Assembly: GCA_002269645.1 (NCBI GenBank)
Contig: NIVC01002697.1
Coordinates: 1-64,000 of the forward strand
DNA length: 64,000 nt
Direction of reading: 5' to 3'
Source: Macrostomum lignano
Taxonomy: Eukaryota
Shown: positions 1 through 57,900 of the stretch, piece after piece
How positions within the stretch are numbered: position 1 is the first letter of the stretch
Layout of the letters: every line of letters begins with the position of its first letter
Position numbers and translations under genes: made by a program
Notes under the pieces: generated by a model
Told to the model about the DNA's origin: nothing
Databases searched by the model: none
What the model saw: only the letters and a program-made list of their open reading frames with translations

Positions 1-2999
<2,999 letters not shown>

Positions 3000-20454: not shown

Positions 20455-20875
20455 AACGGCTGACTCAACTCTGATTGGCTGTAATATCTCACCTGTCTCA
20501 CTTTGTGCTCTGATTGGCTGTAATATCTCACCTGTCTCACTCTGTGCTCTGATTGGCTGGGATATATCACCTGTCTCACTCTGTGCTCTGATTGGCTGGG
20601 ATAAATCACCTGTCTCACTCTGTGCTCTGATTGGCTAGATATCTCACCTGTCTCACTCTGTGCTCTGATTGGCTGGGATATCTTACCTGTTTCACTCTAT
20701 GCTCTGATTGGCTAGGATATGTCACCTGTCTCACCTGTGCTCTGATTGGCTGGGATATCTTTTTTTCTGTTTCACTCTGCTCTGATTGGCTATCGTACCT
20801 CCTGTTTCACCCTGGTCTCTGATTGGCTGGAAGCTTTTTATCTCACTCTACTTTTTGATTGGCTGGGATCTCTTG
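20455..20875. repeat. About 39-bp minisatellite (CTCTGATTGGCTGGGATATCTCACCTGTCTCACTCTGTG) just beyond the FAM78 stop
   Basis: Direct periodicity, about 10 copies. Confidence 0.9.
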
Positions 20876-23900: not shown

Positions 23901-26900
23901 TGGGCCGCCTCGCTGTGATACACCAGACAGTCGCGGCTCTCCACAACCCGGAGGCCGTCCGGCTCCTTGGACTCGGCCCGCCTCTCAGCGCCGTCGTCTC
24001 CTTCGAAGTTGCTGCTTAAGTTGGATGCCGCGGTGCAGCTGAAGTCCGTCACACGGACTAAAGAGCTGATCTCTGCAAGCACGACAGGTGGGATACAGCA
24101 GACTGGCTTGCTAATCCAGCCAATGAGGATACAGCAGACTGGCTTGCTAATCCAGCCAATGAGGATGCGGAATAGAATGGATTGCTAATCTAGCCCACAA
24201 GGATGCAGGAATAGAATGGATTGCTAATCTAGCCCACAAGGATGCAGGAATAGAATGGATTGCTAATCTAGCCCACAAGGATGCACGAATACTCGTAGAA
24301 TGGATTGCTAATCTAGCCAATGAGGATGCAGGAATAGAATGGATTGCTAATCTAGCCCACAAGGATGCAGTAGAATGGATTGCTAATCTACTCGTAGCCA
24401 GGATAACCTAAAAACGGCATGGCCCAGCATAATTGCGCTAAAAAAGCTTTCCCAACCTTTGTCAAAAGCTGGATTATCCCATTGTATGACGGAGGCGGAT
24501 CCAAATTTGCACCTGACGACAGTCGTTAAGGCGACCGCCTTATTTAAACTGGTTGCCACGCGCAGCCCGATGGCAGCAAACGCATGCAGCAATGTTTGAT
24601 GAGCAAAATTGTCTTATTGCTACTTAATGTCTGCAATGCTGGCCTGTACCATCATGACTTCTTCAGTCTCCTCAATGCGACTCCATAGACTTACGCTACG
24701 CTCAATTATCACGAATCACCCACCTCACTCCCCTACTAAATCACCCACCTCACTCCCCTACTAAATCACCCACCTCACTCCCCTACTAAATCACCCACCT
24801 CACTCCCCTACTAAATCACCCACCTCACTCCCCTACTAAATCACCCACCTCACTCCCCTACTAAATCACCCACCTCACTCCCTACTAAATCACCCACCTC
24901 ACTCCCCTACTAAATCACCCACCTCACTCCCCTACTAAATCACCCACCTCACTCCCCTACTAAATCACCCACCTCACTCCCCTACTAAATCACCCACCTC
25001 ACTCCCCTACTAAATCACCCACCTCACTCCCCTACTAAATCACCCACCTCACTCCCCTACTAAATCACCCACCTCACTCCCCTACTAAATCACCCACCTC
25101 ACTCACCTACTAAATCACCCACCTCACTCCCCTACTAAATCAGCCACCTCACTCCCCTACTAAATCAGCCACCTCACTCCCCTACTAAATCACCCACCTC
25201 ACTCCCCTACTAAATCACCCACCTCACTCCCCAACTAAATCACCCACCTCTTTCCCCGACTAAATTACCAACCTCACTCTCCCCTCACTAAGTCACCCAC
25301 CTCACTCAATCACCGAAAAAATACCTTGCCGAAATGAGGAAGTCAAAGAAACAACGACCAAAAAGCATATGAGTAGTGTAGGACGCGAAAATTAAATTTA
25401 TGCAGCATTGCAATCGAATTTAGCCAACTATCTGTATTGTATAGTGTATAAATATAAAACTTTGTTTACAAACCCCACAAAAAAAACAAATATAGAGAAA
25501 AAAATAATTTGAGAAATATTCGACAGAACTTAAAAGATACAACAGGCCCTATACACACTAATTAAATAGAGCATATATGCAGCAGCTTTATACAGCTGTG
25601 TAGTATTATATATATACACATAACATTAATTTCTACTTTAGCCAAAAAACACAGAGATATGACAGGTACAAAACAGGCAAAGATAAAGGCGAATGCTCTT
25701 GATGTGGATTTTGCAAATTGAGGCTTTATGAGACTTAATATATTTATGTTAGCATTGCGCAGTTGAGCAAATCGTACGAAGCTACAACTGACCATTATTG
25801 GACCAAATAATATCCGCATGTAAATAGGCATAGGGAATTGCTGATTAAGAATTTGCTTCTGCGTAATAAAAGCAAAGACCGCAACAAGCAGACCGGATAA
25901 AACGTTATCCGACAGACACAAAGACACACTGACAGACACAAAGACACACTGACAGACACAAAGACACACTGACAGACACAAAGACACACTGACAGACACA
26001 AAGACACACTGACAGACACAAAGACACACTGACAGACACAAAGACACACTGACAGACACAAAGACACACTGACAGACACAAAGACACACTGACAGACACA
26101 AAGACACACTGACAGACACAAAGACACACTGACAGACACAAAGACACACTGACAGACACAAAGACACACTGACAGACACAAAGACACACTGACAGACACA
26201 GACACACTGACAGACACAAAGACACACTGACAGACACAAAGACACACTAGCAGACACAAAGACACACTGACAGACACAAAGACACACTGACAGACACAAA
26301 GACACACTGACAGACACAGACACACTGACAGACACAAAGACACACTGACAGACACAAAGACACACTAGCAGACACAAAGACACACTGACAGACACAAAGA
26401 CACACTGACAGACACAAAGACACACTGACAGACACAGACACACTGACAGACACAAAGACACACTGACAGACACAAAGACACACTAGCAGACACAAAGACA
26501 CACTGACAGACACAAAGACACACTGACAGACACAAAGACACACTGACAGACACAGACACACTGACAGACACAAAGACACACTGACAGACACAAAGACACA
26601 CTGACAGACACAGACACACTGACAGACACAAAGACACACTGACAGACACAAAGACGCACTGACAGACACAAAGACGCACTGACAGACACACAGACAAACT
26701 GACAGACACAAAGACACACTAGCAGACACAAAGACACACTGACAGACACAGACAAACTGACAGACACAAAGACACACTGACAGACACAAAGACGCACTGA
26801 CAGACACAGACACACTGACAGACACAAAGACATACTGACGGACACAAAGACACACTAGCAGACACAAAGACACACTGACAGACACAAAGACACACTGACA

Positions 26901-27837: not shown

Positions 27838-28126
27838 AAGGATCTGGGAGGCTGGCCCAGCAACTGAGGATCTGGGAGACTGGCCCAGCAACTGAGGATC
27901 TGGGAGGCTGGCCCAGCAACTGAGGATCTGGGAGGCTGGCCCAGCAACTGAGGATCTAGGAGGCTGGCCCAGCAACTGAGGATCTGGGAGGCTGGCCCAG
28001 AAACTGAGGATCTGGGAGACTGGCCCAGCAACTGAGGATCTGGGAGGCTGGCCCAGCAACTGAGGATCTGGGAGGCTGGCCCAGCAACTGAGGATCTGGG
28101 AGGCTGGCCCAGCAACTGAGGATCTA
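27838..28126. repeat. 28-bp minisatellite (GAGGATCTGGGAGGCTGGCCCAGCAACT) about 65 bp beyond the RNF19 stop
   Basis: Direct periodicity, about 10 copies; same family at 31790-31925. Confidence 0.93.
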
Positions 28127-28189: not shown

Positions 28190-31100
28190 TCAGCCACTTG
28201 CAGAGAACTCACTCTCCGCAGCCTCATCGACCACCTGATCTCTCGCATAGCCAGCTGATGCTGCACTTAAAGAACAGCGACGACAAGCCGAATCGCTGGC
28301 GTCCATAGCAACAGTTGCCATGGCTGGTTCGCCAGCTGCAGCATCGCAGTTTGCTAACTGATTGTGAGCCTGGGCCTGAGCTGTCGGCAGCTCAATCGGC
28401 TGCCGGTCCTCGCTAATGATGCTGATGCTCTTGCCGTCTGGGTCCCTGGACGGTGCGACGGTTATTTGCCATCGGAAATGTACTTTTATGACTTCTAGGA
28501 CGTCTACGTACATATAAATGCCAAGTATCGCTTTGATAAATATTAACCCAACCCACCTTAAGAAAGACGATGCAAGCAGCCTATTCAGCTGCGTACTAAC
28601 CATAACCAACTTTGCTTAACTTTGCTTTGCCGGCGATTATCCAACTTAACTAAAAACCTGACTATTGAAATAAGATGATAGAAGCGTAGATACCAGAATA
28701 ACTAGATATGGCCACTCTGCACATTTGCGTGTAAGCTACTGTCAGTTTAGTAGTAAGTTAAATAGGAAGCATTTTAACGTATTATTAAAGACAGGCGCTC
28801 ATTTATAGCCCTCTTACCCACTTAGCTTGACCCAGCCAACCGCGTTTTTCCACACAAAAATCTCTACCCCCGCTCTCCGACCCAGCCTAATTACCCATTA
28901 TGTAATTCTTATTGGCGCTGGATAATGTACATGCAATCTTCCTTGCTATTGAACTGAAAGCAGATAAACTGTTATACCAAGCCAATACGAGCTTATCCCT
29001 ATTTCACCCTAAGTAATTTATATGACACAGATATTATGAATAATTATAAACGATTTGATACCCTTCTGATAGTAGAAATTTAAGGAAAAACATTCAATCA
29101 AAAACATGTCTTCAATACTCTACTGATAATAGAAATATAAGAAAAATACGTTGAATCTAAATTTAATGTCTTAAATACTCTACTGATAGTAGAAATATGA
29201 GTAAAATACGTTAAATCTAAAGTATGATGTCTTCAATACTCTACTGATAGTAGAAATATAAGGAAAATACGTTAAATCTAAAACATAATGTCTTTAATAC
29301 TCTACTGATAGTAGCAATATCATATTTTCACTCGTATAAATCAGCCACGACGCAACAATAATACTTGGATAGCCCGGCAACTCACCGACCGCCCGCAATG
29401 CTGCCAGTCAGTCCCAGCATGCTCGCATCGTTAGTGTCCACGGTGTACACAGACAGAGAGCAACTGCGCTTATCGTCCAGCGATTCAAAGCTGCCAACGC
29501 GACAGCCAGTGGCAGCAGCTGATGCTCCTGTTGCCGAGTTGGCATTGGAACAGTGCTGATTATAGGCCAGGACTTCTGCTTGAGTCGTCTGCTGCTGATG
29601 ATGATGATGCTGATGATGCTGCTGCTGGTGACATCTTGACGATGAAGATGCGGGATGGCGCTGCCGGCCGGAGCTGCAGCCGCTGGCAACGAGGCTGAAG
29701 GATACGATAGAATTGGACCCGTCGGACTGCTGGTCCGGCAGCAGCAGCGGGCCGTGCGACTCGTCCTCCCATTGCTGCTTTTTCAGTTTCTGTTGCAGAT
29801 TCTGTTTTTTCTGCTGCTGCAGGGCGACCGCGGCGGCCGAGGCGGCGGCACCGGCGGCGGCACCGGCGGCGGCAACTTTGGCTTCGCGGCCGGAGGACAC
29901 CAGCACCAGGCTAATGGACTCCTCGGTCTGCGCGTCCGCCTGCGAGCAGCCGCTGGCCAGATCGCGTTCTACAGATGCCGCCGGGGCCACGGCGCCTGAT
30001 GTCGAGCCGGCGGCGGATGAGTTCCCGCCGGCGCCGCCTCCGCGATGCCCCGCCATCAGGTCTACGACGGGCCTTGAGCCGCTCCGACTGCTGAACGACA
30101 GGCCCTGGTCGGCATCCGCAGTGCCGTGGAGCTCCATGTCTTCGTCGTCGTCTTCGGGATCCTCGTCCTGCAGGATGCCGCAGCCGTTGGCGCGGCACAG
30201 CGAAACGGGGACCACGCCGTACACGTAGGCCAGCAGGATCGGCACCGACACTCCCACGCTGAGCACCGCGACTACCGGCGATAGGAGGGCGCTGCCGCAC
30301 ACAGCCACGGTTACCAGGCAGTGCCGTCTGGCCCGGCTGCGCTGCTTGGGGCAGAGGGGTTGCTGGGATTCGGGTGACTGAGGCTGATTGATTCAGGTGA
30401 CTGAGGCTGATTGATTCAGGTGACTGAGGCTGATTGATTCGGTGACTGAGGCTGATTGATTCAGGTGACTGAGGCTGAATGATTCAGGTGACTGAAGCTG
30501 ATTGATTCAGGTGACTGAAGCTGATTGATTCAGGTGACTGAGGCTGATTGATTCAGGTGACTGAGGCTGATTGATTCAGGTGACTGAGGCTGATTGATTC
30601 AGGTGACTGAGGCTGATTGATTCGGTGACTGAGGCTGATTGATTCAGGTGACTGAGGCTGATTGATTCAGGTGACTGAGGCTGATTGATTCGGTGACTGA
30701 GGCTGATTGATTCAGGTGACTGAGGCTGATTGATTCGGTGACTGAGGCTGATTGATTCAGGTGACTGAAGCTGATTGATTCAGGTGACTGAGGCTGATTG
30801 ATTCAGGTGACTGAGGCTGATTGATTCAGGTGACTGAAGCTGATTGATTCAGGTGACTGAGGCTGATTGATTCAGGTGACTGAGGCTGATTGATTCAGGT
30901 GACTGAGGCTGATAGATTCAGGTGACTGAGGCTGGTAGATTTAGGTGACTGAGGCTGATAGATTCAGGTGACTGAGGCTGATAGATTCAGGTGATGACTG
31001 AAGCTAATAGATTTAAGTGGCTGAAGCGGAGCTGAAGGATCGGGGATCGAAGCGGAACTGAAGGATCGGGGATTGAAGCGGAGCTGAAGGATCGGGGATT

Positions 31101-32619
31101 GAAGCGGAGCTGAAGGATCGGGGTTGAAGCGGAGCTGAAGGATCGGGGATTAAAGTACACCACAGCACTCACCCGAAGCAGTCCATCGCCCCGCTTCAGT
31201 CTATTGTTAGCCTGCTGACCAACCCAGACCGGGACACCCATTGTGATGGCTGGCACAGCCAGGCCGGCCAGCAGTGCTATACCAATGGGAGCGCCAATCA
31301 GAGTTCCCAGCTGCCATAGGATTTTCTTCTTCCTAGACCAGGGTTTCTTGCCCCAGAAGGTGCAGCCGCTGGGGCTGAGATAGTGCAGGTCCGTGATCTC
31401 CTTCCGGCATAGCCAGCAGAACTCCGAGCCGCACATCTTGCAGCGCATGTGGTTGCAGCTGCCGTCATTCTCCTTAGTAATGTAGGTGGCGCAGCGGGGG
31501 CACTGCTTGATTTCAGCGATGGACTCGGAGCGCGAGGACAGGGACAGGATGTCCGCGCCAGCCCTGGCGGCCGCCAGCACCTCGGCCGTCTGGCGCTCGA
31601 TCCTGGCCTGCTCGCACGTGGTGGTGGGATGCCATTCGGTCTTGCAGTGGTAGCAGAACTGGATGCGGCAAACCGGGCACTCGAGTTGGGGACAGCTGGC
31701 GCAGCCAGTGGCGATGACCGCGTATCTGCGATGGGGAAGCAGGCCAGTGCGAACCGCCGCGGTGAGAATGGGTTGCTTACAGGTGCACTGAGCAACTGAG
31801 GATCTGGGAGGCTGGTGGCCCAGCAACTGAGGATCTGGGAGGCTGGCCCAGCAACTGAGGATCTATAAGGCTAGCTCAGCAATTAAGGATCTGGGAGGCT
31901 GGAGGTGGCCCAGCAACTGAGGCTGAGAGGGGAAAATTCTGCAGATCGAAGGCAGAAAACAGCCACATCGCTCACTTGCAGTCGGGCGCCGGGCACCAGC
32001 GACAGTCAGGATCGGCAGCCAGCACGCGGCGCAGGGTGAACTGCTCGTACTTCAGCCGGAGCCGCTCCTCGTCAACGATGGAATCGACATCGGCCGGGTG
32101 CAGCCGGTTGTTGCAGGACAGGCAGGTGGCCGGCAGGCCCTCGGAGATGCAGAGGCGCAGGCTGGTGCGCAGGCAGGCGTGGCAGGCGAAGTGGTCGCAG
32201 TCCAGCAGCATAGGAGGGAACTGGGCCAGCGGCAGGCTCTCAGTGCACACCGGACACTCTACCAGGCCGGCGATGTCCGCGAATGCAGCGGCTGGACTTC
32301 GGCGCTGCTCGGGGCATCCGGATGCGATCGAGTCGCTTGACGCTGAATTAGCGGCAGCGGCAGCGGCGGCCGTGGACAATCCTGAAGGTCCGGGGACAGC
32401 GACGCTGCTGCTGCTGGCTGGGCCTGACAGTGCTGAAGCTGTTGACTTTTTGGACCGCTTTCTGCTGCCTCCGCTGCCGCTGCCGCCAATCTGACGAAAG
32501 AAGTCGCGCATTGCAAAGACAACAGAGCCTCTGCCACCGCCGCCGCCGCCGACATTATCAGCAGTGCTGCTGCCTGCTGGCCCTCCTCCGCCGCGACTGC
32601 GTCGACAGGAGCGCGACAT
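28190..32619 (-). CDS. RNF19: RBR E3 ubiquitin ligase, RNF19A/B (Dorfin)-like. Exons 32619-31976, 31725-31173, 30341-29386, 28445-28190
   Basis: RING1 ([18 protein letters not shown]), IBR ([26 protein letters not shown]|[23 protein letters not shown]) and RING2 ([30 protein letters not shown]). These are followed by the RNF19-diagnostic [34 protein letters not shown] and two TM segments ending [18 protein letters not shown] phases 2/0/2 are consistent. Confidence 0.95.
28685..28765. mobile_element. Solo terminal fragment of the P-like MITE family
   Basis: CGTAGATACCAGAATAACTAGATATGGCCACTCTGCACATTTGCGTG...AGTAGTAAGTT closely matches the reverse complement of 19115-19190. Confidence 0.65.
29060..29320. 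repeat. About 60-bp AT-rich tandem repeat, each unit carrying the hairpin TCTACT-GAT-AGTAGA
   Basis: 4-5 copies visible in RNF19 intron 3. Confidence 0.75.
30372..31150. repeat. 23-bp minisatellite (GGTGACTGAGGCTGATTGATTCA, 30372-30990) plus a 26-bp unit (31020-31150), filling RNF19 intron 2
   Basis: Direct periodicity. Confidence 0.95.
31790..31925. repeat. Degenerate copy of the 28-bp minisatellite in RNF19 intron 1
   Basis: GAGGATCTGGGAGGCTGG..CCCAGCAACT units. Confidence 0.85.
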
Positions 32620-33967
32620 TGGTTGGCGTGGCTGGAGGCTTAAATAGAAGCCACGCAACTGCTTAATACTAGCTAACCAGTTGACAAGTGCAAGCAAAAA
32701 CTAAGTGGCACTCTCTGCAGTCAGTTTATATAAGAAGACTGCACTGCGCTGTGGTGCAAGATTATACAATACAGATAAGCCAAGTTGCTTCTAGGTGCAT
32801 GTTGGCTTTGGTGGAAATGGCAGTTCTATTATGCTACTCATTTTTAAACCTAAAAACTAGTTGATATGCTCATATTATCAATACTACTTTAAAAATTAGT
32901 TGATATGCTCATATTATCGATACTACTTTAAAAATTAGAGACTTTGTCAAAGAAAAGCTTAATAAATACAACAAAAATTAATTCTATTGTTTTTAACAAC
33001 TAAATTATGGCAAAAGCTCAAGAAGTATACAACAACAAAGATTATACTAGCTTTCTTTCATTGTTGTTTTGCCTTTTTGCCATATTATATTTTTGTTTTT
33101 TTATTGTTGGTATTAATTTTGGAAGTTACCCCTGATTTACTATAATTTATACAGCAAGATTGGCTTGTAGTTTTATATAAATATATGCTAACAATAGTAA
33201 CTAGGTGTCTATATAATAATATATACTATTCAACAATATTCCTTTTGGTAAAAAAATTAAATTAGATGTTTAATTTAATAGATGTAAATAAAATTATAGA
33301 GAAATCATAAAAATTATAATTTTTAATCATACATGTGCAACACATAGCTGACTTAGCCAATCTGCCAGCTAGCAAGGGGCCTAGTCAAGGTAAGTCAAAA
33401 ATGCCCACCCAAGAAAATAGACATAGTACTAATTAGATAATAAGACATTTAGCCTAATAAGACAATCATAGTTAGTCTTTGTTTACCCAAAATTGCATAT
33501 AAATTTTCTTTAGAGTTTCTTCCATAGGTAAGTCATATTTTTGGTCAAAAAGTAAGTTGCACAACCAGTATAAATCAGGGATTTTGTATATTTGTATTTT
33601 TATAAGGCTATGCAACATCTTGGCAAAGTATTATAATATTTTAGCAAAGTTATTTTTGAGGGCTTAAACAAAAAGATGGCCATATAAAAATACTATCTAT
33701 AATTTTTTTTAATATTTTTTAATTAAGAAAAATAAGCATTTAAAGTACCAATTAAAAAGGAATCTATCTCAAAAGGTTTTATACTTTTTATTATACAGTA
33801 TAATTTTTATGCCTATAGGCCATAGGGCCTAATGCCATAGTATCACTGTTATAAATATAATATATAAATTTAGTATATTTAGTTAAAATGATCAAAAGAT
33901 ATCATTCATACTAGAAGTTTCTAGTGTGCATTTGGTTAAGTAAATATTATGAATTTAGTGTTAGCAT

Positions 33968-35819: not shown

Positions 35820-37288
35820 ATGCAGCCATCAATGTCGCCGATGACGCATCAGCAATACCACTGTGCCAGCCCGATGGATGACGATGCCTACGATGACGAA
35901 GACAACAGCTACCAGCCTCCGATGAGGCCGATGGATAGCGGCGATCACAGTATGGAGCCTCACAAGATCTACAAATCGAAGAAGTCGGCATCAGTTGTCA
36001 CTTCCAGCTGCAGGCGCCAACATCTGCAGCAGAAACAGCAACAGCCTCAGCAGTGGCAGCAGCAGCAGCAGTTCCACCAGAGACAGACCGCATTGTCAAG
36101 GATGCATCAGCAGCAGCCATCCGATATGCAAGCCCAGCAAACGCAGCGAACCTGCAGTAAAGTTCCAGTCGAGTACGTCAGCGCCAATGACCCAATAGGA
36201 CCGTCTTCAAATGAAGAGAGCGACTGCAGCTCATTGGAGAATCCTCCACTAGAAGTTCGGGTAAGTACGTGTAAATCAGATGCAGTTTGCATTTACACTG
36301 AAGCGGGAAATATCTGTGCTCCTAACCTCTAACCTAACCTCTGCAGGCTCCGAAGCGACACCCGAATGTCTCAGAAGATGCCATCAGAAGCTGTGGCAAC
36401 AGCCGCCTCCATCACCAGCAGCAGATTTCCATGTACGATCAGAGTCCCCAGCCCAGAGCCACTGGCGGCAAACAGTCTCGCAGCAGGCAGCAGCAACAGC
36501 AAATGGAGATGCAAATTCAGCAGCAGAAGCCGCAGAGACCCAATAAGGCCAGCATGGGTTGCGCACACAAGCAGAGTCAGCGATCGTGTAAGGTACCGGT
36601 TCCAGACACCTGCATGCAGCAACCGCAGACCACTACCGGCAGACACCGGGCCGATCCGACTGCGCTAAGCGCTCAGTTCGACGAGCCTCAAAGCACCTTG
36701 TACGGCCGCAGCCTCACCGTCACAGCCGACGGCAAGCCGCAGTTGCGTCGTCAGCAGCAGCAGCGACTGCCGCAGGTGCCGTCCATGATGCAGCAAGAGG
36801 CAGCTGAGTTCTGCCGTCAGCAGCAGCAACCTCAGCAGCACCAGCGCGTTGGCAAGATGACGACTGAATACCAGCCGACAGTCTTCTCATCAAGCACTAA
36901 GTTGAACTCCAGCATCCCGATGCTCTCGTCTGGGGATCAGGGCCAGGATGCCAGCTTCTCTGAGCCTCAGCCTCAGCAACAATACCAGCAGCACCACACC
37001 AACAGCAGCAACGATTTCCAGCAGGTGGTGGTCAGCCGGCTGAATCTGATGCTGGAGCTGGTCGGCTGTGGCCAGTGCGAGTCGTGCCAGTGCTCCAAGA
37101 CCAGCCAACAGTCGTCCTGCCTGGCTTCCGCTGGCTCGATGCATCACCAGGTGACAACGGAGCCGCATCAGGCTCAGCAGGTGATTCGGGCCTCCCTGCC
37201 AGGCTGCCTTGGCGGCGGCAGGCCGCTGATGCCGACTTCAGTAGCGCCTGGACGTCGCTCAGGACGTCGCGTGCGGGAGCAACTGTAG
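35820..37288 (+). CDS. Gln-rich, low-complexity hypothetical protein (about 460 aa). Exons 35820-36260 and 36347-37288
   Basis: Two GC-rich open frames are joined in phase 0 by an 86-nt intron (CGG|GTAAGT ... CTAAC..CTGCAG|GCT). PolyQ runs and codon style match the other genes here. No recognisable domain; the start codon is uncertain. Confidence 0.6.
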
Positions 37289-38155
37289 CTCCTGAGACTT
37301 CTTTCCCTGCAGAGATTCCCAACAGAAGAGAGGCGACCATAGCAGCCTCTCTGGCATACAGTAGCAGCTTTTGAATGCCTCTGCACTCGGTTTCTCCTCA
37401 GTTTTTACTGTCGATCACCCACTCGTATTTTTCATGCAGTAGAGTGTCCAGTGTCTGTGCAATGCTAACCTCCTTGATGTCGCTGCAGTGACACAATATG
37501 TGAGGCCATGCCTCTCAGAACTGTATTTTACATTTAAACACCGATAAATAAATAAATAAGAAGGCCCAGATTATTTTGCAAGAATTTTTTAATTCAGAGA
37601 TTTTTTCAATTCATTGTTTTTTTACTGTCGAAATGCCCGAGTACCAGGAAAGTATGGAGGTCTAGAATATTCTACTGCAAGTAGTCTTGATGAACTATGG
37701 AAAATTCAAATTTAAGCTTTTCCCGAGCAATTGAAGATTAAGTGGACATTTTATAACTTTTATCATGGAACTTTATCCTGGCTAGTATCTTTTTTAGTTT
37801 CTCGGAATCTCAGTGCGGATAAAACAGAAGTGCTTTATAGCTCTTCGTCTATATCCTGTAAATTTCTTCTAATACATTAGAATTTATGTATTAGTGTATT
37901 TTGAATGACAACTTGAATGAATAAAAGAATCAGACAGGAAATGTGTCATGCATCTGTAGTGTTATCTGATCTCAAACAATGGCCGCACAAGCTTATTATA
38001 TTTTTGCTGATGGTTCCTGGTTGAACTTTCTGTGGCAGAGCGCAAAGATTGTAGCGTTATTTATCGATAGATTGACAGTTTTTTCATCCAACACCGCCTT
38101 AACCGTGTTCAGTCGACGAAATCCTTACATGGCAGATGGAATTACCAGTAGTCGT

Positions 38156-39661
38156 CTAGTAACGACGGTAGGAGCTGTAGCTTGGACGGTAGGAGCTGTA
38201 GCTCGGGTAGTAGGAGCTGTAGCTTGGACGGTAGGAGCTGTAGCTCGGGTAGTAGGAGCTGTAGCTTGGACGGTAGGAGCTGTAGCTTGGGTAGTAGGAG
38301 CTGTAGCTTGGACGGTAGGAGCTGTAGCTCGGGTAGTAAGAGCTGTAGCTTGGACGGTAGGAGCTGTAGCTCGGGTAGTAGGAGCTGTAGCTTGGACGGT
38401 AGGAGCTGTAGCTCGGGTAGTAGGAGCTGTAGCTTGGACGGTAGGAGCTGTAGCTCGGATAGTAGGAGCTGTAGCTTGGACGGTAGGAGCTGTAGCTCGG
38501 GTAGTAGGAGCTGTAGCTTGGACGGTAGGAGCTGTAGCTCGGGTAGTAGGAGCTGTAGCTTGGACGGTAGGAGCTGTAGCTCGGGTAGTAGGAGCTGTAG
38601 CTTGGACGGTAGGAGCTGTAGCTCGGGTAGTAGGAGCTGTAGCTTGGACGGTAGGAGCTGTAGCTCGGATAGTAGGAGCTGTAGCTTGGACGGTAGGAGC
38701 TGTAGCTCGGATAGTAGGAGCTGTAGCTTGGACGGTAGGAGCTGTAGCTCGGGTAGTAGGAGCTGTAGCTTGGACGGTAGGAGCTGTAGCTCGGGTAGTA
38801 AGAGCTGTAGCTTGGACGGTAGGAGCTGTAGCTCGGGTAGTAGGAGCTGTAGCTTGGACGGTAGGAGCTGTAGCTCGGGTAGTAGGAGCTGTAGCTTGGA
38901 CGGTAGGAGCTGTAGCTCGGGTAGTAGGAGCTGTAGCTTGGACGGTAGGAGCTGTAGCTCGGGTAGTAAGAGCTGTAGCTTGGACGGTAGGAGCTGTAGC
39001 TCGGGTAGTAAGAGCTGTAGCTTGGACGGTAGGAGCTGTAGCTCGGGTAGTAAGAGCTGTAGCTTGGACGGTAGGAGCTGTAGCTCGGGTAGTAGGAGCT
39101 GTAGCTTGGACGGTAGGAGCTGTAGCTTGGGTAGTAGGAGCTGTAGCTTGGACGGTAGGAGCTGTAGCTTGGACGGTAGGAGCTGTAGCTCGGGTAGTAG
39201 GAGCTGTAGCTTGGACGGTAGGAGCTGTAGCTCGGGTAGTAAGAGCTGTAGCTTGGACGGTAGGAGCTGTAGCTTGGACGGTAGGAGCTGTAGCTCGGGT
39301 AGTAGGAGCTGTAGCTTGGACGGTAGGAGCTGTAGCTCGGGTAGTAGGAGCTGTAGCTTGGACGGTAGGAGCTGTAGCTCGGGTAGTAAGAGCTGTAGCT
39401 TGGACGGTAGGAGCTGTAGCTCGGGTAGTAGGAGCTGTAGCTTGGACGGTAGGAGCTGTAGCTCGGGTAGTAGGAGCTGTAGCTTGGACGGTAGGAGCTG
39501 TAGTGGGTGGTCCAGCTAGAAGAGCTCCGATAAGAGCTGCCATAGTGGCTCGGATAGCAACTCGCCGACGGCAGGTAGGAAACGTAGCTGGTGTACCGGC
39601 CCTGCCCAGAGGCTACAAGTGTGAAGCCTAGCAGGCAGCAAAGCAGTGCGGCGGCTTTCAT
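38156..39661 (-). CDS. Secreted Ser/Tyr/Pro-rich tandem-repeat protein (501 aa; about 63 heptads SYSSYRP / SYSSYYP)
   Basis: ATG at 39661, then signal-peptide-like MKAAALLCCLLGFTLVASG|Q, a unique S/Y-rich linker, an uninterrupted repeat and a stop just after it. TATAAA lies about 75 bp upstream. All nucleotide variants among repeats are synonymous in this frame only. Confidence 0.85.
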   Translation of the reverse strand: MKAAALLCCLLGFTLVASGQGRYTSYVSYLPSASCYPSHYGSSYRSSSSWTTHYSSYRPSYSSYYPSYSSYRPSYSSYYPSYSSYRPSYSSYYPSYSSYRPSYSSYYPSYSSYRPSYSSYYPSYSSYRPSYSSYRPSYSSYYPSYSSYRPSYSSYYPSYSSYRPSYSSYRPSYSSYYPSYSSYRPSYSSYYPSYSSYRPSYSSYYPSYSSYRPSYSSYYPSYSSYRPSYSSYYPSYSSYRPSYSSYYPSYSSYRPSYSSYYPSYSSYRPSYSSYYPSYSSYRPSYSSYYPSYSSYRPSYSSYYPSYSSYRPSYSSYYPSYSSYRPSYSSYYPSYSSYRPSYSSYYPSYSSYRPSYSSYYPSYSSYRPSYSSYYPSYSSYRPSYSSYYPSYSSYRPSYSSYYPSYSSYRPSYSSYYPSYSSYRPSYSSYYPSYSSYRPSYSSYYPSYSSYRPSYSSYYPSYSSYRPSYSSYYPSYSSYRPSYSSYYPSYSSYRPSYSSYRRY

Positions 39662-39735
39662 GTCTGGAGAATTTTTCAAATGGTTGTCGAAGTCTACGCA
39701 AGAAATAGCAGATTTGACAGCATTTTAGGCTTTCA

Positions 39736-39741
39736 TTTATA
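39736..39741 (-). promoter_or_regulatory. Candidate TATA box of the Ser/Tyr-rich secreted protein gene
   Basis: TATAAA on the minus strand, about 75 nt upstream of the ATG. Confidence 0.5.
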
Positions 39742-47460: not shown

Positions 47461-47657
47461 AAACTGCCACAGATGTCACACGACTTTTCACTTGAGCTCT
47501 GATCCTGTGAATTCGGATCTTCAATCGGCCAAAACGCCAATATATGACGGGCACTGCTCTTTCGCTTCCAACCAAAGCAGTTCAAGTTAAGGAGACAGTC
47601 GAGACAGAAAGTCACTAGAAATTATAGATTGAACTGACCTCTGCATGTGGGATATGG

Positions 47658-48024
47658 ACTGCTAATCTAGCCACAAGGATGCAGGAATAGAATGGATTGC
47701 TAATCTAGCCCACAAGGATGCAGGAATAGAACGGATTGCTAATCTAGCCCACAAGGATGCAGGAATACAATGGATTGCTAATCTAGCCCACAAGGATGCA
47801 GGAATACAATGGATTGCTAATATAGCCCACAAAGATGCAGGAATAGAATGGATTGCTAATCTAGCCCACAAGGATGCAGGAATATAATGGATTGCTAATC
47901 TAGCCCACAAAGATGCAGTAATAGAATGGATTGCTAATCTAGCCCACAAGGATGCAGGAATAGAATGGATTGCTAATCTAGCCCACAAGGATGCAGGAAT
48001 AGAATGGATTGCTAATCTAGCCAA
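47658..48024. repeat. 39-bp minisatellite, same family and orientation as 24160-24390
   Basis: Direct periodicity, about 9 copies. Confidence 0.93.
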
Positions 48025-51969: not shown

Positions 51970-54900
51970 TGTCTCTCTCAGTCTCTCCCAGACTTCTCTC
52001 AGTCTCTCTCAGTCTCTCCCAGACTTCTCTCAGTCTCTCTCAGTCTCTCCCAGACTTCTCTCAGTCTCTCTCAGTCTCTCCCAGACTTCTCTCAGTCTCT
52101 CTCAGTGTCTCTCAGTCTCTCTCAGTCTCTCTCAGTGTCTCTCAGTCTCTCAGTCTCTCTCAGTGTCTCTCAGTCTCTCTCAGTCTCTCTCAGTGTCTCT
52201 CAGTCTCTCAGTCTCTCTCAGTGTCTCTCAGTCTCTCTCAGTCTCTCTCAGTGTCTCTCAGTCTCTCAGTCTCTCTCAGTCTCTCTCAGTCTCTCCCAGA
52301 CTTCTCTCAGTCTCTCTCAGTGTCTCTCAGTCTCTCTCAGTCTCTCTCAGTGTCTCTCAGTCTCTCAGTCTCTCTCAGTGTCTCTCAGTCTCTCTCAGTC
52401 TCTCTCAGTGTCTCTCAGTCTCTCAGTCTCTCTCAGTGTCTCTCAGTCTCTCTCAGTCTCTCTCAGTGTCTCTCAGTCTCTCAGTCTCTCTCAGTGTCTC
52501 TCAGTCTCTCAGTCTCTCTCAGTCTCTCTCAGTCTCTCTCAGTCTCTCTCAAGTCTCTCTCAGTCTCTCCCAGACTCTCAGTCTCTCTCAGTGTCTCTCA
52601 GTCTCTCCCAGACTTCTCTCAGTCTCTCTCAGTGTCTCTCAGTCTCTCTCAGTCTCTCTCAGTCTCTCTCAGTCTCTCTCAGTCTCTCTCAGTCTCTCTC
52701 AGTCTCTCTCAGTCTCTCCCAGACTTCTCTCAGTCTCTCTCAGTGTCTCTCAGTCTCTCTCAGTCTCTCTCAAGTCTCTCTCAGTCTCTCTCAGTCTCTC
52801 TCAGTCTCTCCCAGACTTCTCTCAGTCTCTCTCAGTGTCTCTCAGTCTCTCTCAGTCTCTCTCAGTGTCTCTCAGTCTCTCAGTCTCTCTCAGTGTCTCT
52901 CAGTCTCTCTCAGTCTCTCTCAGTGTCTCTCAGTCTCTCAGTCTCTCTCAGTCTCTCTCAGTGTCTCTCAGTCTCTCAGTCTCTCTCAGTCTCTCTCAGT
53001 CTCTCCCAGACTTCTCTCAGTCTCTCTCAGTGTCTCTCAGTCTCTCTCAGTCTCTCTCAGTGTCTCTCAGTCTCTCAGTCTCTCTCAGTGTCTCTCAGTC
53101 TCTCTCAGTCTCTCTCAGTGTCTCTCAGTCTCTCAGTCTCTCTCAGTGTCTCTCAGTCTCTCTCAGTCTCTCTCAGTGTCTCTCAGTCTCTCAGTCTCTC
53201 TCAGTGTCTCTCAGTCTCTCAGTCTCTCTCAGTCTCTCTCAGTCTCTCTCAGTCTCTCTCAGTCTCTCTCAGTCTCTCCCAGACTTCTCTCAGTCTCTCT
53301 CAGTCTCTCTCAGTGTCTCTCAGTCTCTCAGTCTCTCTCAGTGTCTCTCAGTCTCTCTCAGTCTCTCTCAGTGTCTCTCAGTCTCTCAGTCTCTCTCAGT
53401 CTCTCTCAGTCTCTCCCAGACTTCTCTCAGTCTCTCTCAGTGTCTCTCAGTCTCTCTCAGTCTCTCTCAGTGTCTCTCAGTCTCTCAGTCTCTCTCAGTG
53501 TCTCTCAGTCTCTCTCAGTCTCTCTCAGTGTCTCTCAGTCTCTCAGTCTCTCTCAGTGTCTCTCAGTCTCTCAGTCTCTCTCAGTCTCTCTCAGTCTCTC
53601 TCAGTCTCTCCCAGACTTCTCTCAGTCTCTCTCAGTGTCTCTCAGTCTCTCTCAGTCTCTCTCAGTGTCTCTCAGTCTCTCAGTCTCTCTCAGTCTCTCA
53701 GTCTCTCAGTCTCTCTCAGTCTCTCTCAGTCTCTCTCAGTCTCTCCCAGACTTCTCTCAGTCTCTCTCAGTCTCTCTCAGTGTCTCTCAGTCTCTCAGTC
53801 TCTCTCAGTGTCTCTCAGTCTCTCTCAGTCTCTCTCAGTGTCTCTCAGTCTCTCAGTCTCTCTCAGTCTCTCTCAGTCTCTCCCAGACTTCTCTCAGTCT
53901 CTCTCAGTGTCTCTCAGTCTCTCTCAGTCTCTCTCAGTGTCTCTCAGTCTCTCAGTCTCTCTCAGTGTCTCTCAGTCTCTCTCAGTCTCTCTCAGTGTCT
54001 CTCAGTCTCTCAGTCTCTCTCAGTGTCTCTCAGTCTCTCAGTCTCTCTCAGTCTCTCTCAGTCTCTCTCAGTCTCTCCCAGACTTCTCTCAGTCTCTCTC
54101 AGTGTCTCTCAGTCTCTCTCAGTCTCTCTCAGTGTCTCTCAGTCTCTCAGTCTCTCTCAGTCTCTCAGTCTCTCAGTCTCTCTCAGTCTCTCTCAGTCTC
54201 TCTCAGTCTCTCCCAGACTTCTCTCAGTCTCTCTCAGTGTCTCTCAGTCTCTCAGTCTCTCTCAGTGTCTCTCAGTCTCTCAGTCTCTCTCAGTGTCTCT
54301 CAGTCTCTCTCAGTCTCTCTCAGTGTCTCTCAGTCTCTCAGTCTCTCTCAGTGTCTCTCAGTCTCTCAGTCTCTCTCAGTCTCTCTCAGTCTCTCTCAGT
54401 CTCTCCCAGACTTCTCTCAGTCTCTCTCAGTGTCTCTCAGTCTCTCTCAGTCTCTCTCAGTGTCTCTCAGTCTCTCAGTCTCTCTCAGTGTCTCTCAGTC
54501 TCTCAGTCTCTCTCAGTCTCTCTCAGTCTCTCTCAGTCTCTCTCAGTCTCTCCCAGACTTCTCTCAGTCTCTCTCAGTGTCTCTCAGTCTCTCTCAGTCT
54601 CTCTCAGTGTCTCTCAGTCTCTCAGTCTCTCTCAGTGTCTCTCAGTCTCTCAGTCTCTCTCAGTGTCTCTCAGTCTCTCTCAGTCTCTCTCAGTGTCTCT
54701 CAGTCTCTCAGTCTCTCTCAGTGTCTCTCAGTCTATCAGTCTCTCTCAGTCTCTCTCAGTCTCTCTCAGTCTCTCCTAGTCTCTCAGTCTCTCCCAGTCT
54801 CTCTCAGTCTCTCTCAGTCTCTCTCAGTGTCTCTCAGTCTCTCAGTCTCTCTCAGTCTCTCAGTCTCTCAGTCTCTCTCAGTCTCTCTCAGTCTCTCTCA

Positions 54901-57900
54901 GTCTCTCCCAGACTTCTCTCAGTCTCTCTCAGTGTCTCTCAGTCTCTCAGTCTCTCTCAGTGTCTCTCAGTCTCTCAGTCTCTCTCAGTCTCTCCCAGTC
55001 TCTCCTAGTCTCTCAGTCTCTCCCAGTCTCTCTCAGTCTCTCTCAGTCTCTCTCAGTCTCTCTCAGTCTCTCTCAGTCTCTCCCAGTGTCTCTCAGTCTC
55101 TCTCAGTCTCTCTCAGCCTCTCGCAGCCTCTCTCTCAGTCTCTCTCAGTCTCTCCCAGTGTCTCCCAGTCTCTCTCAGTCTCTCTCAGCCTCTCGCAGCC
55201 TCTCTCAGTCTCTCTCAGTCTCTCTCAGTCTCTCTCAGTCTCTCTCAGTCTCTCCCAGTGTCTCTCAGTCTCTCTCAGTCTCTCTCAGCCTCTCGCAGCC
55301 TCTCTCTCAGTCTCTCTTAGTCTCTCTCAGTCTCTCTCAGTCTCTCTCAGTCTCTCCCAGTGTCTCTCAGTCTCTCTCAGTCTCTCTCAGTCTCTCTCAG
55401 CCTCTCGCAGCCTCTCTCAGTCTCTCTCAGTCTCTCTCAGCCTCTCGCAGCCTCTCTCAGTCTCTCTCAGTCTCTCTCAGTGTCTCTCAGTCTCGTCTCT
55501 CTCAGTGTCTCTCAGTCTCTCAGTCTCTCTCAGTGTCTCTCAGTCTCTCTCAGTCTCTCTCAGTGTCTCTCAGTCTCTCAGTCTCTCTCAGTGTCTCTCA
55601 GTCTCTCTCAGTCTCTCTCAGTGTCTCTCAGTCTCTCAGTCTCTCTCAGTGTCTCTCAGTCTCTCAGTCTCTCTCAGTCTCTCTCAGTCTCTCTCAGTCT
55701 CTCCCAGACTTCTCTCAGTCTCTCTCAGTGTCTCTCAGTCTCTCTCAGTCTCTCTCAGTGTCTCTCAGTCTCTCAGTCTCTCTCAGTGTCTCTCAGTCTC
55801 TCAGTCTCTCTCAGTGTCTCTCAGTCTCTCAGTCTCTCTCAGTCTCTCTCAGTCTCTCTCAGTCTCTCCCAGACTTCTCTCAGTCTCTCTCAGTGTCTCT
55901 CAGTCTCTCTCAGTCTCTCTCAGTGTCTCTCAGTCTCTCAGTCTCTCTCAGTGTCTCTCAGTCTCTCTCAGTCTCTCTCAGTGTCTCTCAGTCTCTCAGT
56001 CTCTCTCAGTGTCTCTCAGTCTCTCAGTCTCTCTCAGTCTCTCTCAGTCTCTCTCAGTCTCTCCCAGACTTCTCTCAGTCTCTCTCAGTGTCTCTCAGTC
56101 TCTCTCAGTCTCTCTCAGTGTCTCTCAGTCTCTCAGTCTCTCTCAGTGTCTCTCAGTCTCTCAGTCTCTCTCAGTGTCTCTCAGTCTCTCTCAGTCTCTC
56201 CCAGACTTCTCTCAGTCTCTCTCAGTGTCTCTCAGTCTCTCTCAGTCTCTCTCAGTGTCTCTCAGTCTCTCAGTCTCTCTCAGTGTCTCTCAGTCTCTCA
56301 GTCTCTCTCAGTGTCTCTCAGTCTCTCTCAGTCTCTCTCAGTGTCTCTCAGTCTCTCAGTGTCTCTCAGTCTCTCAGTCTCTCTCAGTCTCTCTCAGTCT
56401 CTCTCAGTCTCTCCCAGACTTCTCTCAGTCTCTCTCAGTGTCTCTCAGTCTCTCAGTCTCTCTCAGTGTCTCTCAGTCTCTCAGTCTCTCTCAGTGTCTC
56501 TCAGTCTATCAGTCTCTCTCAGTCTCTCTCAGTCTCTCTCAGTCTCTCCCAGACTTCTCTCAGTCTCTCTCAGTGTCTCTCAGTCTCTCTCAGTCTCTCT
56601 CAGTGTCTCTCAGTCTTTCCCAGACTTCTCTCAGTCTCTCTCAGTGTCTCTCAGTCTCTCTCAGTCTCTCTCAGTCTCTCTCAGTGTCTCTCAGTCTCTC
56701 AGTCTCTCTCAGTGTCTCTCAGTCTCTCAGTCTCTCTCAGTCTCTCTCAGTCTCTCTCAGTCTCTCCCAGACTTCTCTCAGTCTCTCTCAGTGTCTCTCA
56801 GTCTCTCTCAGTCTCTCTCAGTGTCTCTCAGTCTCTCAGTCTCTCTCAGTGTCTCTCAGTCTCTCAGTCTCTCTCAGTCTCTCTCAGTCTCTCTCAGTCT
56901 CTCTCAGTCTCTCCCAGACTTCTCTCAGTCTCTCTCAGTGTCTCTCAGTCTCTCTCAGTCTCTCTCAGTGTCTCTCAGTCTCTCAGTCTCTCTCAGTGTC
57001 TCTCAGTCTCTCAGTCTCTCTCAGTGTCTCTCAGTCTCTCTCAGTCTCTCTCAGTGTCTCTCAGTCTCTCAGTCTCTCTCAGTGTCTCTCAGTCTATCAG
57101 TCTCTCTCAGTCTCTCTCAGTCTCTCTCAGTCTCTCCCAGACTTCTCTCAGTCTCTCTCAGTGTCTCTCAGTCTCTCTCAGTCTCTCTCAGTGTCTCTCA
57201 GTCTCTCAGTCTCTCTCAGTCTCTCAGTCTCTCAGTCTCTCTCAGTCTCTCTCAGTCTCTCTCAGTCTCTCCCAGACTTCTCTCAGTCTCTCTCAGTGTC
57301 TCTCAGTCTCTCAGTCTCTCTCAGTGTCTCTCAGTCTCTCAGTCTCTCTCAGTCTCTCCCAGTCTCTCCTAGTCTCTCAGTCTCTCCCAGTCTCTCTCAG
57401 TCTCTCTCAGTCTCTCTCAGTCTCTCTCAGTCTCTCTCAGTCTCTCCCAGTGTCTCTCAGTCTCTCTCAGTCTCTATCAGCCTCTCGCAGCCTCTCTCTC
57501 AGTCTCTCTCAGTCTCTCCCAGTGTCTCTCAGTCTCTCTCAGTCTCTCTCAGCCTCTCGCAGCCTCTCTCAGTCTCTCTCAGTCTCTCTCAGTCTCTCTC
57601 AGTCTCTCTCAGTCTCTCCCAGTGTCTCTCAGTCTCTCTCAGTCTCTCTCAGTCTCTCTCAGTCTCTCCCAGACTTCTCTCAGTCTCTCTCAGTGTCTCT
57701 CAGTCTCTCAGTCTCTCTCAGTGTCTCTCAGTCTCTCAGTCTCTCTCAGTGTCTCTCAGTCTCTCAGTCTCTCTCAGTCTCTCTCAGTCTCTCTCAGTCT
57801 CTCCCAGACTTCTCTCAGTCTCTCTCAGTGTCTCTCAGTCTCTCTCAGTCTCTCTCAGTGTCTCTCAGTCTCTCAGTCTCTCTCAGTGTCTCTCAGTCTC

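What the first reader, a model, noticed from the sequence alone, without database searches (positions are those of the whole stretch)
38156..39661. Secreted protein made of about 63 Ser/Tyr heptads: candidate bioadhesive or eggshell/cement protein
A signal-peptide-like N-terminus (MKAAALLCCLLGFTLVASG|Q) leads into strictly alternating SYSSYRP and SYSSYYP units, giving about 43% Ser, 36% Tyr, 14% Pro and 7% Arg in the repeat. Secreted Tyr/Ser polymers are the known chemistry of DOPA/phosphoserine glues and tanned structures (mussel foot protein 1 AKPSYPPTYK repeats, sandcastle-worm Ser/Tyr cement proteins, DOPA-containing flatworm eggshell proteins). I do not recognise this repeat from any named family. 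Automated pipelines could easily mask it as one more minisatellite, and every repeat Arg precedes Pro, so tryptic proteomics would largely miss it. The function is inference.
Basis: partly seen in the sequence, partly recalled or inferred. Interest (0 to 1): 0.82.

Follow-up and report, generated by a model that had tools for sequence, protein, structure and literature searches.

The report
Secreted Ser/Tyr heptad-repeat flatworm protein
A single-exon gene of the flatworm Macrostomum lignano encodes a secreted 58-kDa protein made almost entirely of 64 SYSSY(R/Y)P heptads, with no detectable relatives; it is probably a cross-linkable structural material such as an eggshell or cement precursor, but its tissue and function remain untested.

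Summary
Window 38156-39661 (-) is a 501-aa ORF: a 19-aa signal-peptide-like start, a 33-aa unique head, then 64 heptads (32 SYSSYRP, 30 SYSSYYP, two edge variants). The mature protein is 42% Ser, 34% Tyr, 13.5% Pro and 7.7% Arg, with no Asp, Glu or Lys.

The window is Macrostomum lignano Mlig_3_7 contig NIVC01002697.1 and is packed with minisatellites, so an open frame alone means little. Three things mark this frame as coding:
- All 12 variant repeat units differ only by synonymous third-position changes.
- Only this frame has ATG plus signal peptide before the array and a stop right after it.
- The record's annotation, built from RNA-seq, holds exactly this model and not the other long ORFs.

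No homologue was found. Hits from an exhaustive HMMER scan are unrelated period-7 repeats, including the Pol II CTD. Pfam finds nothing, and AlphaFold predicts disorder.

The functional reading is only partly supported. A Tyr-cross-linked secreted structural polymer is plausible. A role in the tail-plate glue is unlikely, because that glue is described as Mlig-ap1 plus Mlig-ap2. Tissue, modifications and conservation in other haplotypes could not be tested. I rate it a new variant of a known kind, of moderate interest.

The parts
39735..39741 (-). TATAAAT, a TATA-box-like element 80 nt upstream of the ATG (putative core promoter)
   Evidence: Read directly. Function is inferred. A possible splice or trans-splice acceptor (ttctccAG) lies 2 nt before the ATG, so the real 5' end is undetermined.
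39605..39661 (-). Codons 1-19, MKAAALLCCLLGFTLVASG: signal-peptide-like N-terminus, predicted cleavage ASG|Q
   Evidence: Hydropathy profile and the -3/-1 rule; the only helix in the AF2 model is residues 4-17. Not run through SignalP.
39506..39604 (-). Unique Ser/Tyr-rich head, aa 20-52 (QGRYTSYVSYLPSASCYPSHYGSSYRSSSSWTT), holding the only Cys of the mature protein
   Evidence: Its DNA does not align to the repeat unit except at the junction.
38162..39505 (-). Array of 64 21-nt units coding heptads: HYSSYRP, 32 SYSSYRP (all identical DNA), 30 SYSSYYP (4 DNA variants, all synonymous), SYSSYRR
38156..38161 (-). Final Tyr codon and TAG stop directly after the array
37990..38155 (-). Putative 3' UTR. 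No canonical AATAAA; variant hexamers ATAAAT/AAATAA (about 38057-38064) and AATATA/AATAAG (37992-38002)
   Evidence: Read. The poly(A) site is not determined (inference).

Best explanation
This is a real, intronless M. lignano gene. Its product enters the secretory pathway and loses a 19-aa signal peptide. That leaves a 482-aa, 58-kDa polymer that is intrinsically disordered and strongly cationic (37 Arg, no Asp/Glu/Lys, net charge about +37), built from SYSSY(R/Y)P heptads.

Inferred mechanism: with a Tyr or Arg 'sticker' at about three of every seven residues, separated by Ser spacers and a Pro kink, the chains should self-associate through Tyr-Tyr and Tyr-Arg contacts into a dense phase. 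That suits storage in secretory granules. After release, the 165 Tyr per chain would give abundant substrate for phenol-oxidase or peroxidase cross-linking (DOPA-quinone or dityrosine) into an insoluble material.

The most likely setting is the tanned eggshell or egg cement, with other gland secretions as rivals.

My rough likelihoods:
- Gene is real: about 0.9.
- Protein is secreted: about 0.8.
- Structural, cross-linked material: about 0.5.
- Eggshell or cement specifically: about 0.3.
For: Coding frame:
- 12 of 30 SYSSYYP units carry DNA variants: TCC>TCT x7, TAC>TAT x3, CCG>CCA x2. All are third-position and synonymous.
- Only 19% of all possible substitutions in the unit (33% of transitions) would be synonymous in this frame. 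Three independent variant classes all being silent therefore has p of about 0.007-0.04.
- The same variants are non-synonymous in every other stop-free frame.
- Other period-multiple-of-3 minisatellites with enough variant copies to judge show more replacement than silent changes in every stop-free frame.
- Both length irregularities are whole 21-nt units.

Gene model:
- The assembly record holds exactly this 501-aa single-exon model.
- The 550-aa and 472-aa ORFs of other frames are not on record.
- Mlig_3_7 annotation was derived from RNA-seq assemblies plus TransDecoder (PMC5730564).

Secretion: signal-peptide features.

Disorder: pLDDT about 30 from residue 19 onward, with no secondary structure.

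Self-association: the pentapeptide SYSSY equals FUS residues 54-58, part of a crystallised LARKS segment with tandem [G/S]Y[G/S] motifs (10.1101/153817).

Flatworm precedent: schistosome eggshell precursors are Tyr-rich (p48 26% Tyr) and are cross-linked by tyrosinase (PMC3499410). M. lignano oocytes store eggshell granules.
Against: - I saw no direct expression data. The transcript evidence is second-hand, through the annotation pipeline, and that pipeline says transcripts overlapping repeat annotations were filtered out, so it is unclear why this one survived.
- The N-terminal query found no transcript-derived fragment in the protein collection. But that collection seems to lack M. lignano proteins altogether, so this is weak.
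- The synonymous-variant test rests on only three independent variant classes.
- No conservation data exist from other haplotypes or species.
- Unlike known flatworm eggshell precursors, the protein has almost no Gly.
- No tyrosinase link was tested.
- AF2 without an alignment is a weak disorder predictor.
- The array length in a long-read assembly may not be exact.
Confidence: 0.45

Rival explanations
1. It is a non-coding minisatellite. The ORF and 'signal peptide' are accidents of a 42-bp repeat in a repeat-rich genome, and the gene model is an annotation artefact.
For: The window holds about 45 separate tandem arrays (63 TRF rows, some of them overlapping calls of one array). Four frames over this array are open for 445-550 aa. 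All 32 R units are identical in DNA, so the array is young and has had little time to show selection. No homologue was found anywhere.
Against: All variants are silent in this frame only, unlike the control arrays. The ATG plus a textbook signal peptide lie in unique DNA just upstream, and the stop falls two codons after the array. A TATA-like box lies 80 nt upstream. Only this frame is annotated, and no other minisatellite ORF in the 21.5-kb locus was called as a gene.
Confidence: 0.08
2. It is a mucin-like, heavily O-glycosylated secreted protein of epidermal, rhabdite or mucus glands. It would act as a hydrated lubricating or protective coat and would not be a cross-linked solid.
For: 42% Ser with a Pro every seventh residue, disorder, and a signal peptide. 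Glycosylated secreted proteins are prominent in Macrostomum secretions; Mlig-ap2 is lectin-positive.
Against: 34% Tyr and almost no Thr (0.6%) are atypical of mucin domains. The strong net positive charge is also unusual. No glycosylation prediction or data were available.
Confidence: 0.15
3. It is a fast-evolving reproductive secretion, for example a prostate or seminal-fluid protein or an antrum-gland product, whose repeat array evolves rapidly.
For: It is an orphan with no detectable relatives. The array is young and homogenised, with copy-number irregularities. In M. lignano many tail-specific secreted transcripts are prostate-specific and lack annotation (PMC4490696; PMC5977470).
Against: Neither the repeat nor the signal-peptide DNA appears in the held supplementary files of the positional RNA-seq or seminal-fluid screen papers, though some of those files were cut when stored. 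Nothing in the composition points specifically to seminal fluid.
Confidence: 0.15
4. It is a component of the tail-plate duo-gland temporary adhesive.
For: A secreted, cationic, repetitive protein with Tyr/Arg chemistry that favours surface binding.
Against: [quoted passage not shown] L-DOPA has not been found in temporary adhesives (PMC9229212). This protein shares none of their features: it has no Lys or Gly repeats and no domains.
Confidence: 0.05

Closest known systems
RNA polymerase II Rpb1 C-terminal domain (YSPTSPS heptads)
   Same: It is the only solved-structure match (E about 6e-14, 54 bits, bias 294). Both have heptad period, a similar copy number (64 here against the long CTD array of the animal Rpb1 chains it matched), and P-S-Y-S shared in register (also P0119). 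Both are Tyr/Ser/Pro-rich and disordered.
   Different: Only 4 of 7 positions match. There are no Ser-Pro dipeptides at all, and there is no polymerase body: the ORF is a signal peptide plus repeats. This is convergent periodicity, not homology.
FUS low-complexity domain / LARKS segments (SYSGYS, SYSSYGQS)
   Same: The pentapeptide SYSSY is identical to FUS 54-58. The S-Y-S motif is present in every heptad, and the Tyr 'stickers' sit in a Ser-rich, acid-free context.
   Different: FUS is intracellular and Gly/Gln-rich, with degenerate repeats. This protein has a signal peptide, 0.4% Gly, one Gln, 7.7% Arg and a Pro in every heptad, and its repeats are near-perfect.
Schistosome eggshell precursor proteins p14, p19 and p48
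   Same: Flatworm secreted proteins, Tyr-rich (p48 26% Tyr), stored in vesicles and cross-linked by tyrosinase into the eggshell (PMC3499410).
   Different: They are Gly-rich (15-44% Gly in p48 and p14) and made in vitellocytes. This protein is Ser-rich and Gly-poor. Macrostomum has no separate vitellaria; its eggshell granules form in the oocyte. No sequence similarity was detected.
Mussel foot protein 1 and sandcastle-worm Pc-3 (from my own knowledge, not tested here)
   Same: Secreted tandem-repeat proteins whose Tyr and Ser residues carry the adhesive or curing chemistry (DOPA, phosphoserine).
   Different: Mfp-1 decapeptides are Lys-rich and Pro/Hyp-rich, whereas this mature protein has no Lys. 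Pc-3 is mostly long poly-Ser runs that become polyanionic, whereas here the longest Ser run in the repeat is 2 and the unmodified chain is strongly cationic.
Other secreted Tyr-rich heptad proteins found by the scan: Branchiostoma lanceolatum Hypp2070 (CAH1258767.1, YRSGYIR heptads) and Haliotis 'cubilin-like' proteins (YPDYATA heptads)
   Same: Signal-peptide-like N-termini followed by long arrays of Tyr-rich heptads. The amphioxus protein also pairs Tyr with Arg.
   Different: The heptad sequences differ, the N-termini share nothing, the taxa are unrelated, and both proteins are uncharacterised. They are analogues at most.

Membership tests
RNA polymerase II CTD | Heptad consensus Y-S-P-T-S-P-S with two Ser-Pro sites per repeat | tested here: not met
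   Only P-S-Y-S aligns. The protein sequence contains no 'SP' dipeptide: every Pro follows Arg, Tyr or Leu.
RNA polymerase II CTD | Array is the C-terminal extension of the Rpb1 catalytic subunit | tested here: not met
   The ORF is 501 aa of signal peptide, a short head and repeats, with no Pfam domain.
FUS-type prion-like low-complexity domain (LARKS-bearing) | Multiple [G/S]Y[G/S] motifs in a low-complexity region with few charged residues | tested here: inconclusive
   S-Y-S occurs in every regular heptad and SYSSY equals FUS 54-58. But the region has 7.7% Arg, almost no Gly or Gln, and a Pro every 7 residues. No threading or aggregation test was run.
FUS-type prion-like low-complexity domain (LARKS-bearing) | Intracellular (nuclear or cytoplasmic) protein, usually attached to RNA-binding domains | tested here: not met
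   Signal-peptide-like N-terminus and no other domain.
Trematode eggshell precursors (p14/p19/p48) | Tyr-rich AND Gly-rich composition (p48 26% Y, 15% G; p14 11% Y, 44% G) | tested here: not met
   Tyr 34% meets the first part; Gly 0.4% does not meet the second (reference values from PMC3499410).
Trematode eggshell precursors (p14/p19/p48) | Expressed in the eggshell-granule-producing cell and cross-linked by tyrosinase | not testable with these tools
   No M. lignano expression data or biochemistry could be reached.
Mussel foot protein 1-type DOPA adhesive | Tandem Lys/Pro/Tyr decapeptides (AKPSYPPTYK-like), with Tyr converted to DOPA | tested here: not met
   The mature protein has 0 Lys and the repeat is a different heptad. 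DOPA is not testable here. The family definition is from my own knowledge.
Sandcastle-worm Pc-3-type polyphosphoserine protein | Long poly-Ser runs punctuated by Tyr, heavily phosphorylated to a polyanion | tested here: not met
   The longest Ser run in the repeat is 2 (4 in the head), and Ser is 42%. There are no S-x-E priming sites because Asp and Glu are absent. Phosphorylation is not testable. The family definition is from my own knowledge.
Macrostomum adhesion proteins Mlig-ap1 / Mlig-ap2 | Very large proteins (5407 and 14,794 aa). In Mlig-ap1, low-complexity regions flank a core with conserved domains, and the proseriate counterpart of those regions is Gly/Arg/Lys-rich. [quoted passage not shown] | tested here: not met
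   This protein is 501 aa, has no Pfam domain and almost no Gly or Lys. Family features are from PMC9229212.

The most novel reading that the evidence does not exclude
A natural, extracellular, single-component 'sticker-and-spacer' polymer: 64 copies of a FUS-like SYSSY motif plus Arg, exported through the secretory pathway. It would build a biological material (eggshell, cement or plug) by Tyr/Arg-driven phase separation followed by maturation into a solid. It might do so without the Gly-rich or Lys/DOPA logic of known flatworm, mussel and tubeworm materials.
Probability: 0.15. Interest if true: 0.75.

Novelty: new variant of a known kind. Interest (0 to 1): 0.5.

Why it matters
If it is expressed as predicted, this is among the most Tyr-rich natural secreted proteins I am aware of: 34% Tyr, against 26% for schistosome p48. 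Its design is unusually clean: Ser spacers, Tyr and Arg stickers, a Pro kink, and no acidic residues, Lys or Gly. It sits in a flatworm where RNAi, in situ hybridisation and transgenesis are routine. That makes the link from low-complexity sequence to extracellular material (granule packing, coacervation, tanning) directly testable. It could also identify an eggshell or cement precursor in an early-branching flatworm, where no such precursor turned up in my literature searches. It is a practical warning too: repeat masking and tryptic proteomics would both miss it.

Tried and rejected
- phmmer of the full protein and of the 73-aa N-terminus against 5.8 billion clusters found nothing. The exact sequence is not in that collection.
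- A search with the neighbouring RBR-ligase exon returned only 59-65% identical RNF19 proteins from other animals and no M. lignano entry. So that collection appears not to index M. lignano proteins, and the missing paralogues are uninformative.
- The exhaustive HMMER scan of 1.84 billion representatives gave 881 'hits'. The top 150 are unrelated period-7 or period-14 repeats. None contains SYSSY or aligns to the signal peptide (aa 1-19); no best stretch starts before query residue 23. I rejected them as periodicity artefacts.
- I considered the Pol II CTD similarity and rejected it as homology.
- I tried to reach a duplicated locus through the exact spliced 456-aa neighbour protein.
- Literature: SYSSYRP and SYSSYYP are absent from the paper library. 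The held supplement files of the positional RNA-seq paper and the seminal-fluid ISH screen contain neither the repeat nor SYSSY, and the latter also lacks the signal-peptide DNA. The shell/cement-gland marker RNA815_13 is a different, 16-kb collagen/vWF-like transcript. The Lengerer 2018 tail-organ paper is not held. Two broader searches were unproductive.
- Rfam and tRNA scans of the window found nothing.
- The sigma-70 promoter and terminator scan does not apply to a eukaryote.

Full report
**Origin and setting.**
An exact look-up of the ORF product places the window on contig NIVC01002697.1 of assembly GCA_002269645.1, with window coordinates equal to record coordinates. [quoted passage not shown] The window is typical of that genome, in which simple and tandem repeats make up 15%. 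It has 63 TRF rows (some overlapping), a LINE-like element, a copia-like element, myosin-like exons and an RNF19-like RBR ligase gene. No Rfam family or tRNA was found. In this setting a long ORF inside a repeat with a period that is a multiple of 3 is expected by chance. Four frames across this array are open for 445-550 aa.

**The observation.**
The ORF at 38156-39661 (-) is 1506 nt and 501 aa. Its parts are:
- residues 1-19, MKAAALLCCLLGFTLVASG;
- residues 20-52, a unique Ser/Tyr-rich head with the single Cys of the mature protein;
- residues 53-500, 64 heptads: HYSSYRP, 32 SYSSYRP, 30 SYSSYYP and a terminal SYSSYRR;
- a final Tyr and a TAG stop.

The R and Y units alternate except at two R-R junctions. 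TRF reports a 42-bp unit, 31.8 copies, 97% matches and no indels. The mature chain is 482 aa and 58 kDa. It is 41.9% Ser, 34.2% Tyr, 13.5% Pro and 7.7% Arg, has no Asp, Glu or Lys, and has a calculated pI of 9.4 and net charge about +37 at pH 7.

**Is it coding?** Three independent lines say yes.
- *Variation among copies.* All 32 SYSSYRP units are identical in DNA. Twelve of the 30 SYSSYYP units vary, through three kinds of change (TCC>TCT x7, TAC>TAT x3, CCG>CCA x2). All are third-position and synonymous in the Ser/Tyr frame. Only 19% of possible substitutions in the unit (33% of transitions) would be silent in this frame, so three independent silent classes have p of about 0.007-0.04. The same changes alter the amino acid in every other stop-free frame. 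Other window minisatellites whose period is a multiple of 3, and which have enough variant copies to judge, show more replacement than silent changes in every stop-free frame. Both length irregularities are whole 21-nt units.
- *Gene architecture.* Only this frame has an ATG followed by a canonical signal-peptide pattern in unique DNA immediately upstream of the array. That pattern is a basic n-region, a 14-residue hydrophobic core, and small residues at -3 and -1 before Gln20. Only this frame has a stop two codons after the array. A TATAAAT lies 80 nt upstream.
- *Annotation.* The record holds exactly this 501-aa single-exon gene. The two other long ORFs over the array are not on record, and none of the other minisatellite ORFs in the 21.5-kb locus was called. 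Mlig_3_7 annotation was derived from genome-guided RNA-seq assemblies with TransDecoder ORFs, so a model implies a transcript. This is second-hand evidence, and I saw no reads.

**Relatives.**
- Pfam finds nothing.
- phmmer of the whole protein and of the N-terminus against 5.8 billion clusters finds nothing. However, the neighbour-gene control shows that M. lignano proteins are apparently not indexed there. So absence of within-species paralogues is uninformative, while absence of relatives in other taxa does carry weight.
- The exhaustive scan of 1.84 billion representatives returns 881 matches, but the top 150 are other period-7 or period-14 repeat proteins. None contains SYSSY or reaches the signal peptide (aa 1-19); no best stretch starts before query residue 23.
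- Among those hits and in the PDB, the recurrent match is the RNA polymerase II CTD, which shares P-S-Y-S in register. The protein has no Ser-Pro sites and no polymerase body, so this is convergence in a heptad repeat.
- Two hits are signal-peptide proteins with Tyr-rich heptads of different sequence: an amphioxus hypothetical protein and abalone 'cubilin-like' proteins. They are analogues only.
- Neither heptad occurs in the paper library. SYSSY appears only as FUS 54-58, part of the crystallised LARKS segment SYSSYGQS.

**Structure and likely mechanism.**
AlphaFold2 without an alignment gives a helix at residues 4-17 only, and pLDDT about 30 with no secondary structure from residue 19 on. 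That is weak evidence but fits a disordered polymer. The following is inference from composition. Tyr and Arg are the residues known to drive condensation of low-complexity domains, and Tyr-to-Ser replacement weakens FUS hydrogels. Here about three of every seven residues are Tyr or Arg, separated by Ser, with a Pro that should prevent long beta-strands. Such a chain should condense readily, which is convenient for granule storage. It also offers 165 Tyr per molecule for oxidative cross-linking.

Flatworm precedent exists. Schistosome eggshell precursors are Tyr-rich (p48 26% Tyr), are stored in vesicles and are cross-linked by tyrosinase. M. lignano oocytes accumulate eggshell granules, and shell/cement glands surround the female antrum. 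I therefore rank an eggshell or egg-cement precursor first. The margin is modest, because the protein lacks the Gly of known eggshell precursors and nothing ties it to any tissue.

**Rivals.**
- *Tail-plate glue.* This role is unlikely. That glue is described as Mlig-ap1 plus Mlig-ap2, which suffice for adhesion, and L-DOPA has been found only in permanent adhesives.
- *Mucin-like coat, or fast-evolving prostate or antrum secretion.* Both remain possible.
- *Non-coding minisatellite.* This is not excluded, but it has to explain away the silent-only variation, the signal peptide, the stop placement and the selective annotation.

**Phosphoserine.**
It is unsupported. There are no acidic residues to prime S-x-E-type Golgi kinase sites, and no poly-Ser runs as in Pc-3.

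**What could not be done.**
- I could not reach expression data.
- I could not reach duplicated M. lignano loci or other Macrostomum genomes.
- SignalP was not available.
- Searches of the held supplementary files of two M. lignano expression screens found no trace of the gene.

**Verdict.**
The gene is probably real and its product probably secreted. It has no detectable homologues and does not pass the membership tests for any named family I considered. I rate it a new variant of a known kind (secreted Tyr-rich tandem-repeat material proteins). Interest is moderate and would rise sharply if expression and a material phenotype were shown.

Noticed in passing
window 8266-8968, 12014-12181, 14184-14920, 20472-20864, 24118-24323 (also 7451-7769): A CCAAT-box-like core (RRCCAATSR, mostly AGCCAATCA, AACCAATGA or AGCCAATGA) occurs 50 times against 7.2 +/- 3.0 expected. 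Nearly all hits lie inside at least five different minisatellite families with unrelated unit lengths (40, 79, 52, 39 and 36/39 bp), mostly in or near the introns of the myosin-like gene.
   Followed up: partly
window 5275-5712 and 6574-6978; 24136-24390 and 47654-48022; 27839-28125 and 31791-31902: The same minisatellite unit recurs at separate places in the window (a 21-mer, a 39-mer and a 28-mer). So arrays, or their seeds, have been dispersed and did not arise only in place.
   Followed up: no
window 51971-59433: A 7.5-kb array of a 10-bp unit (GTCTCTCTCA, about 765 copies, 86% matches) gives spurious Ser/Leu ORFs of up to 2024 aa.
   Followed up: no
window 28190-32637 (-): A multi-exon gene for an RNF19A/B-like RBR (IBR-domain) E3 ubiquitin ligase, 808 aa in the annotation. 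The best relatives of its large exon are 59-65% identical animal RNF19 proteins.
   Followed up: partly
window 35832-37288 (+): A convergent neighbour gene, 870 bp from the 3' end of the Ser/Tyr gene, encodes a 456-aa Gln-rich protein with no Pfam domain. One 86-nt GT-AG intron (36261-36346) reproduces the annotated length.
   Followed up: partly
window about 4661-16134 (+): Exons resembling an unconventional myosin tail (IQ-motif region at 4661-5281, coiled-coil segments, C-terminal globular part) are separated by introns filled with minisatellites. I judged this from the ORF translations only.
   Followed up: no
window 712-2780 (-) and 60518-63495 (+): Two retroelements. One is LINE-like, with ORF1 plus an endonuclease-type ORF running toward the window start. 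The other is copia-type, with gag, integrase and reverse transcriptase and a reading-frame break near 62686-62782.
   Followed up: no
window 39721-39723 (-): An upstream ATG 18 nt after the TATA-like box opens a 9-codon ORF ending 31 nt before the main ATG. It probably lies upstream of the transcription start. A polypyrimidine-AG (ttctccAG) sits 2 nt before the main ATG and could be a spliced-leader acceptor.
   Followed up: no
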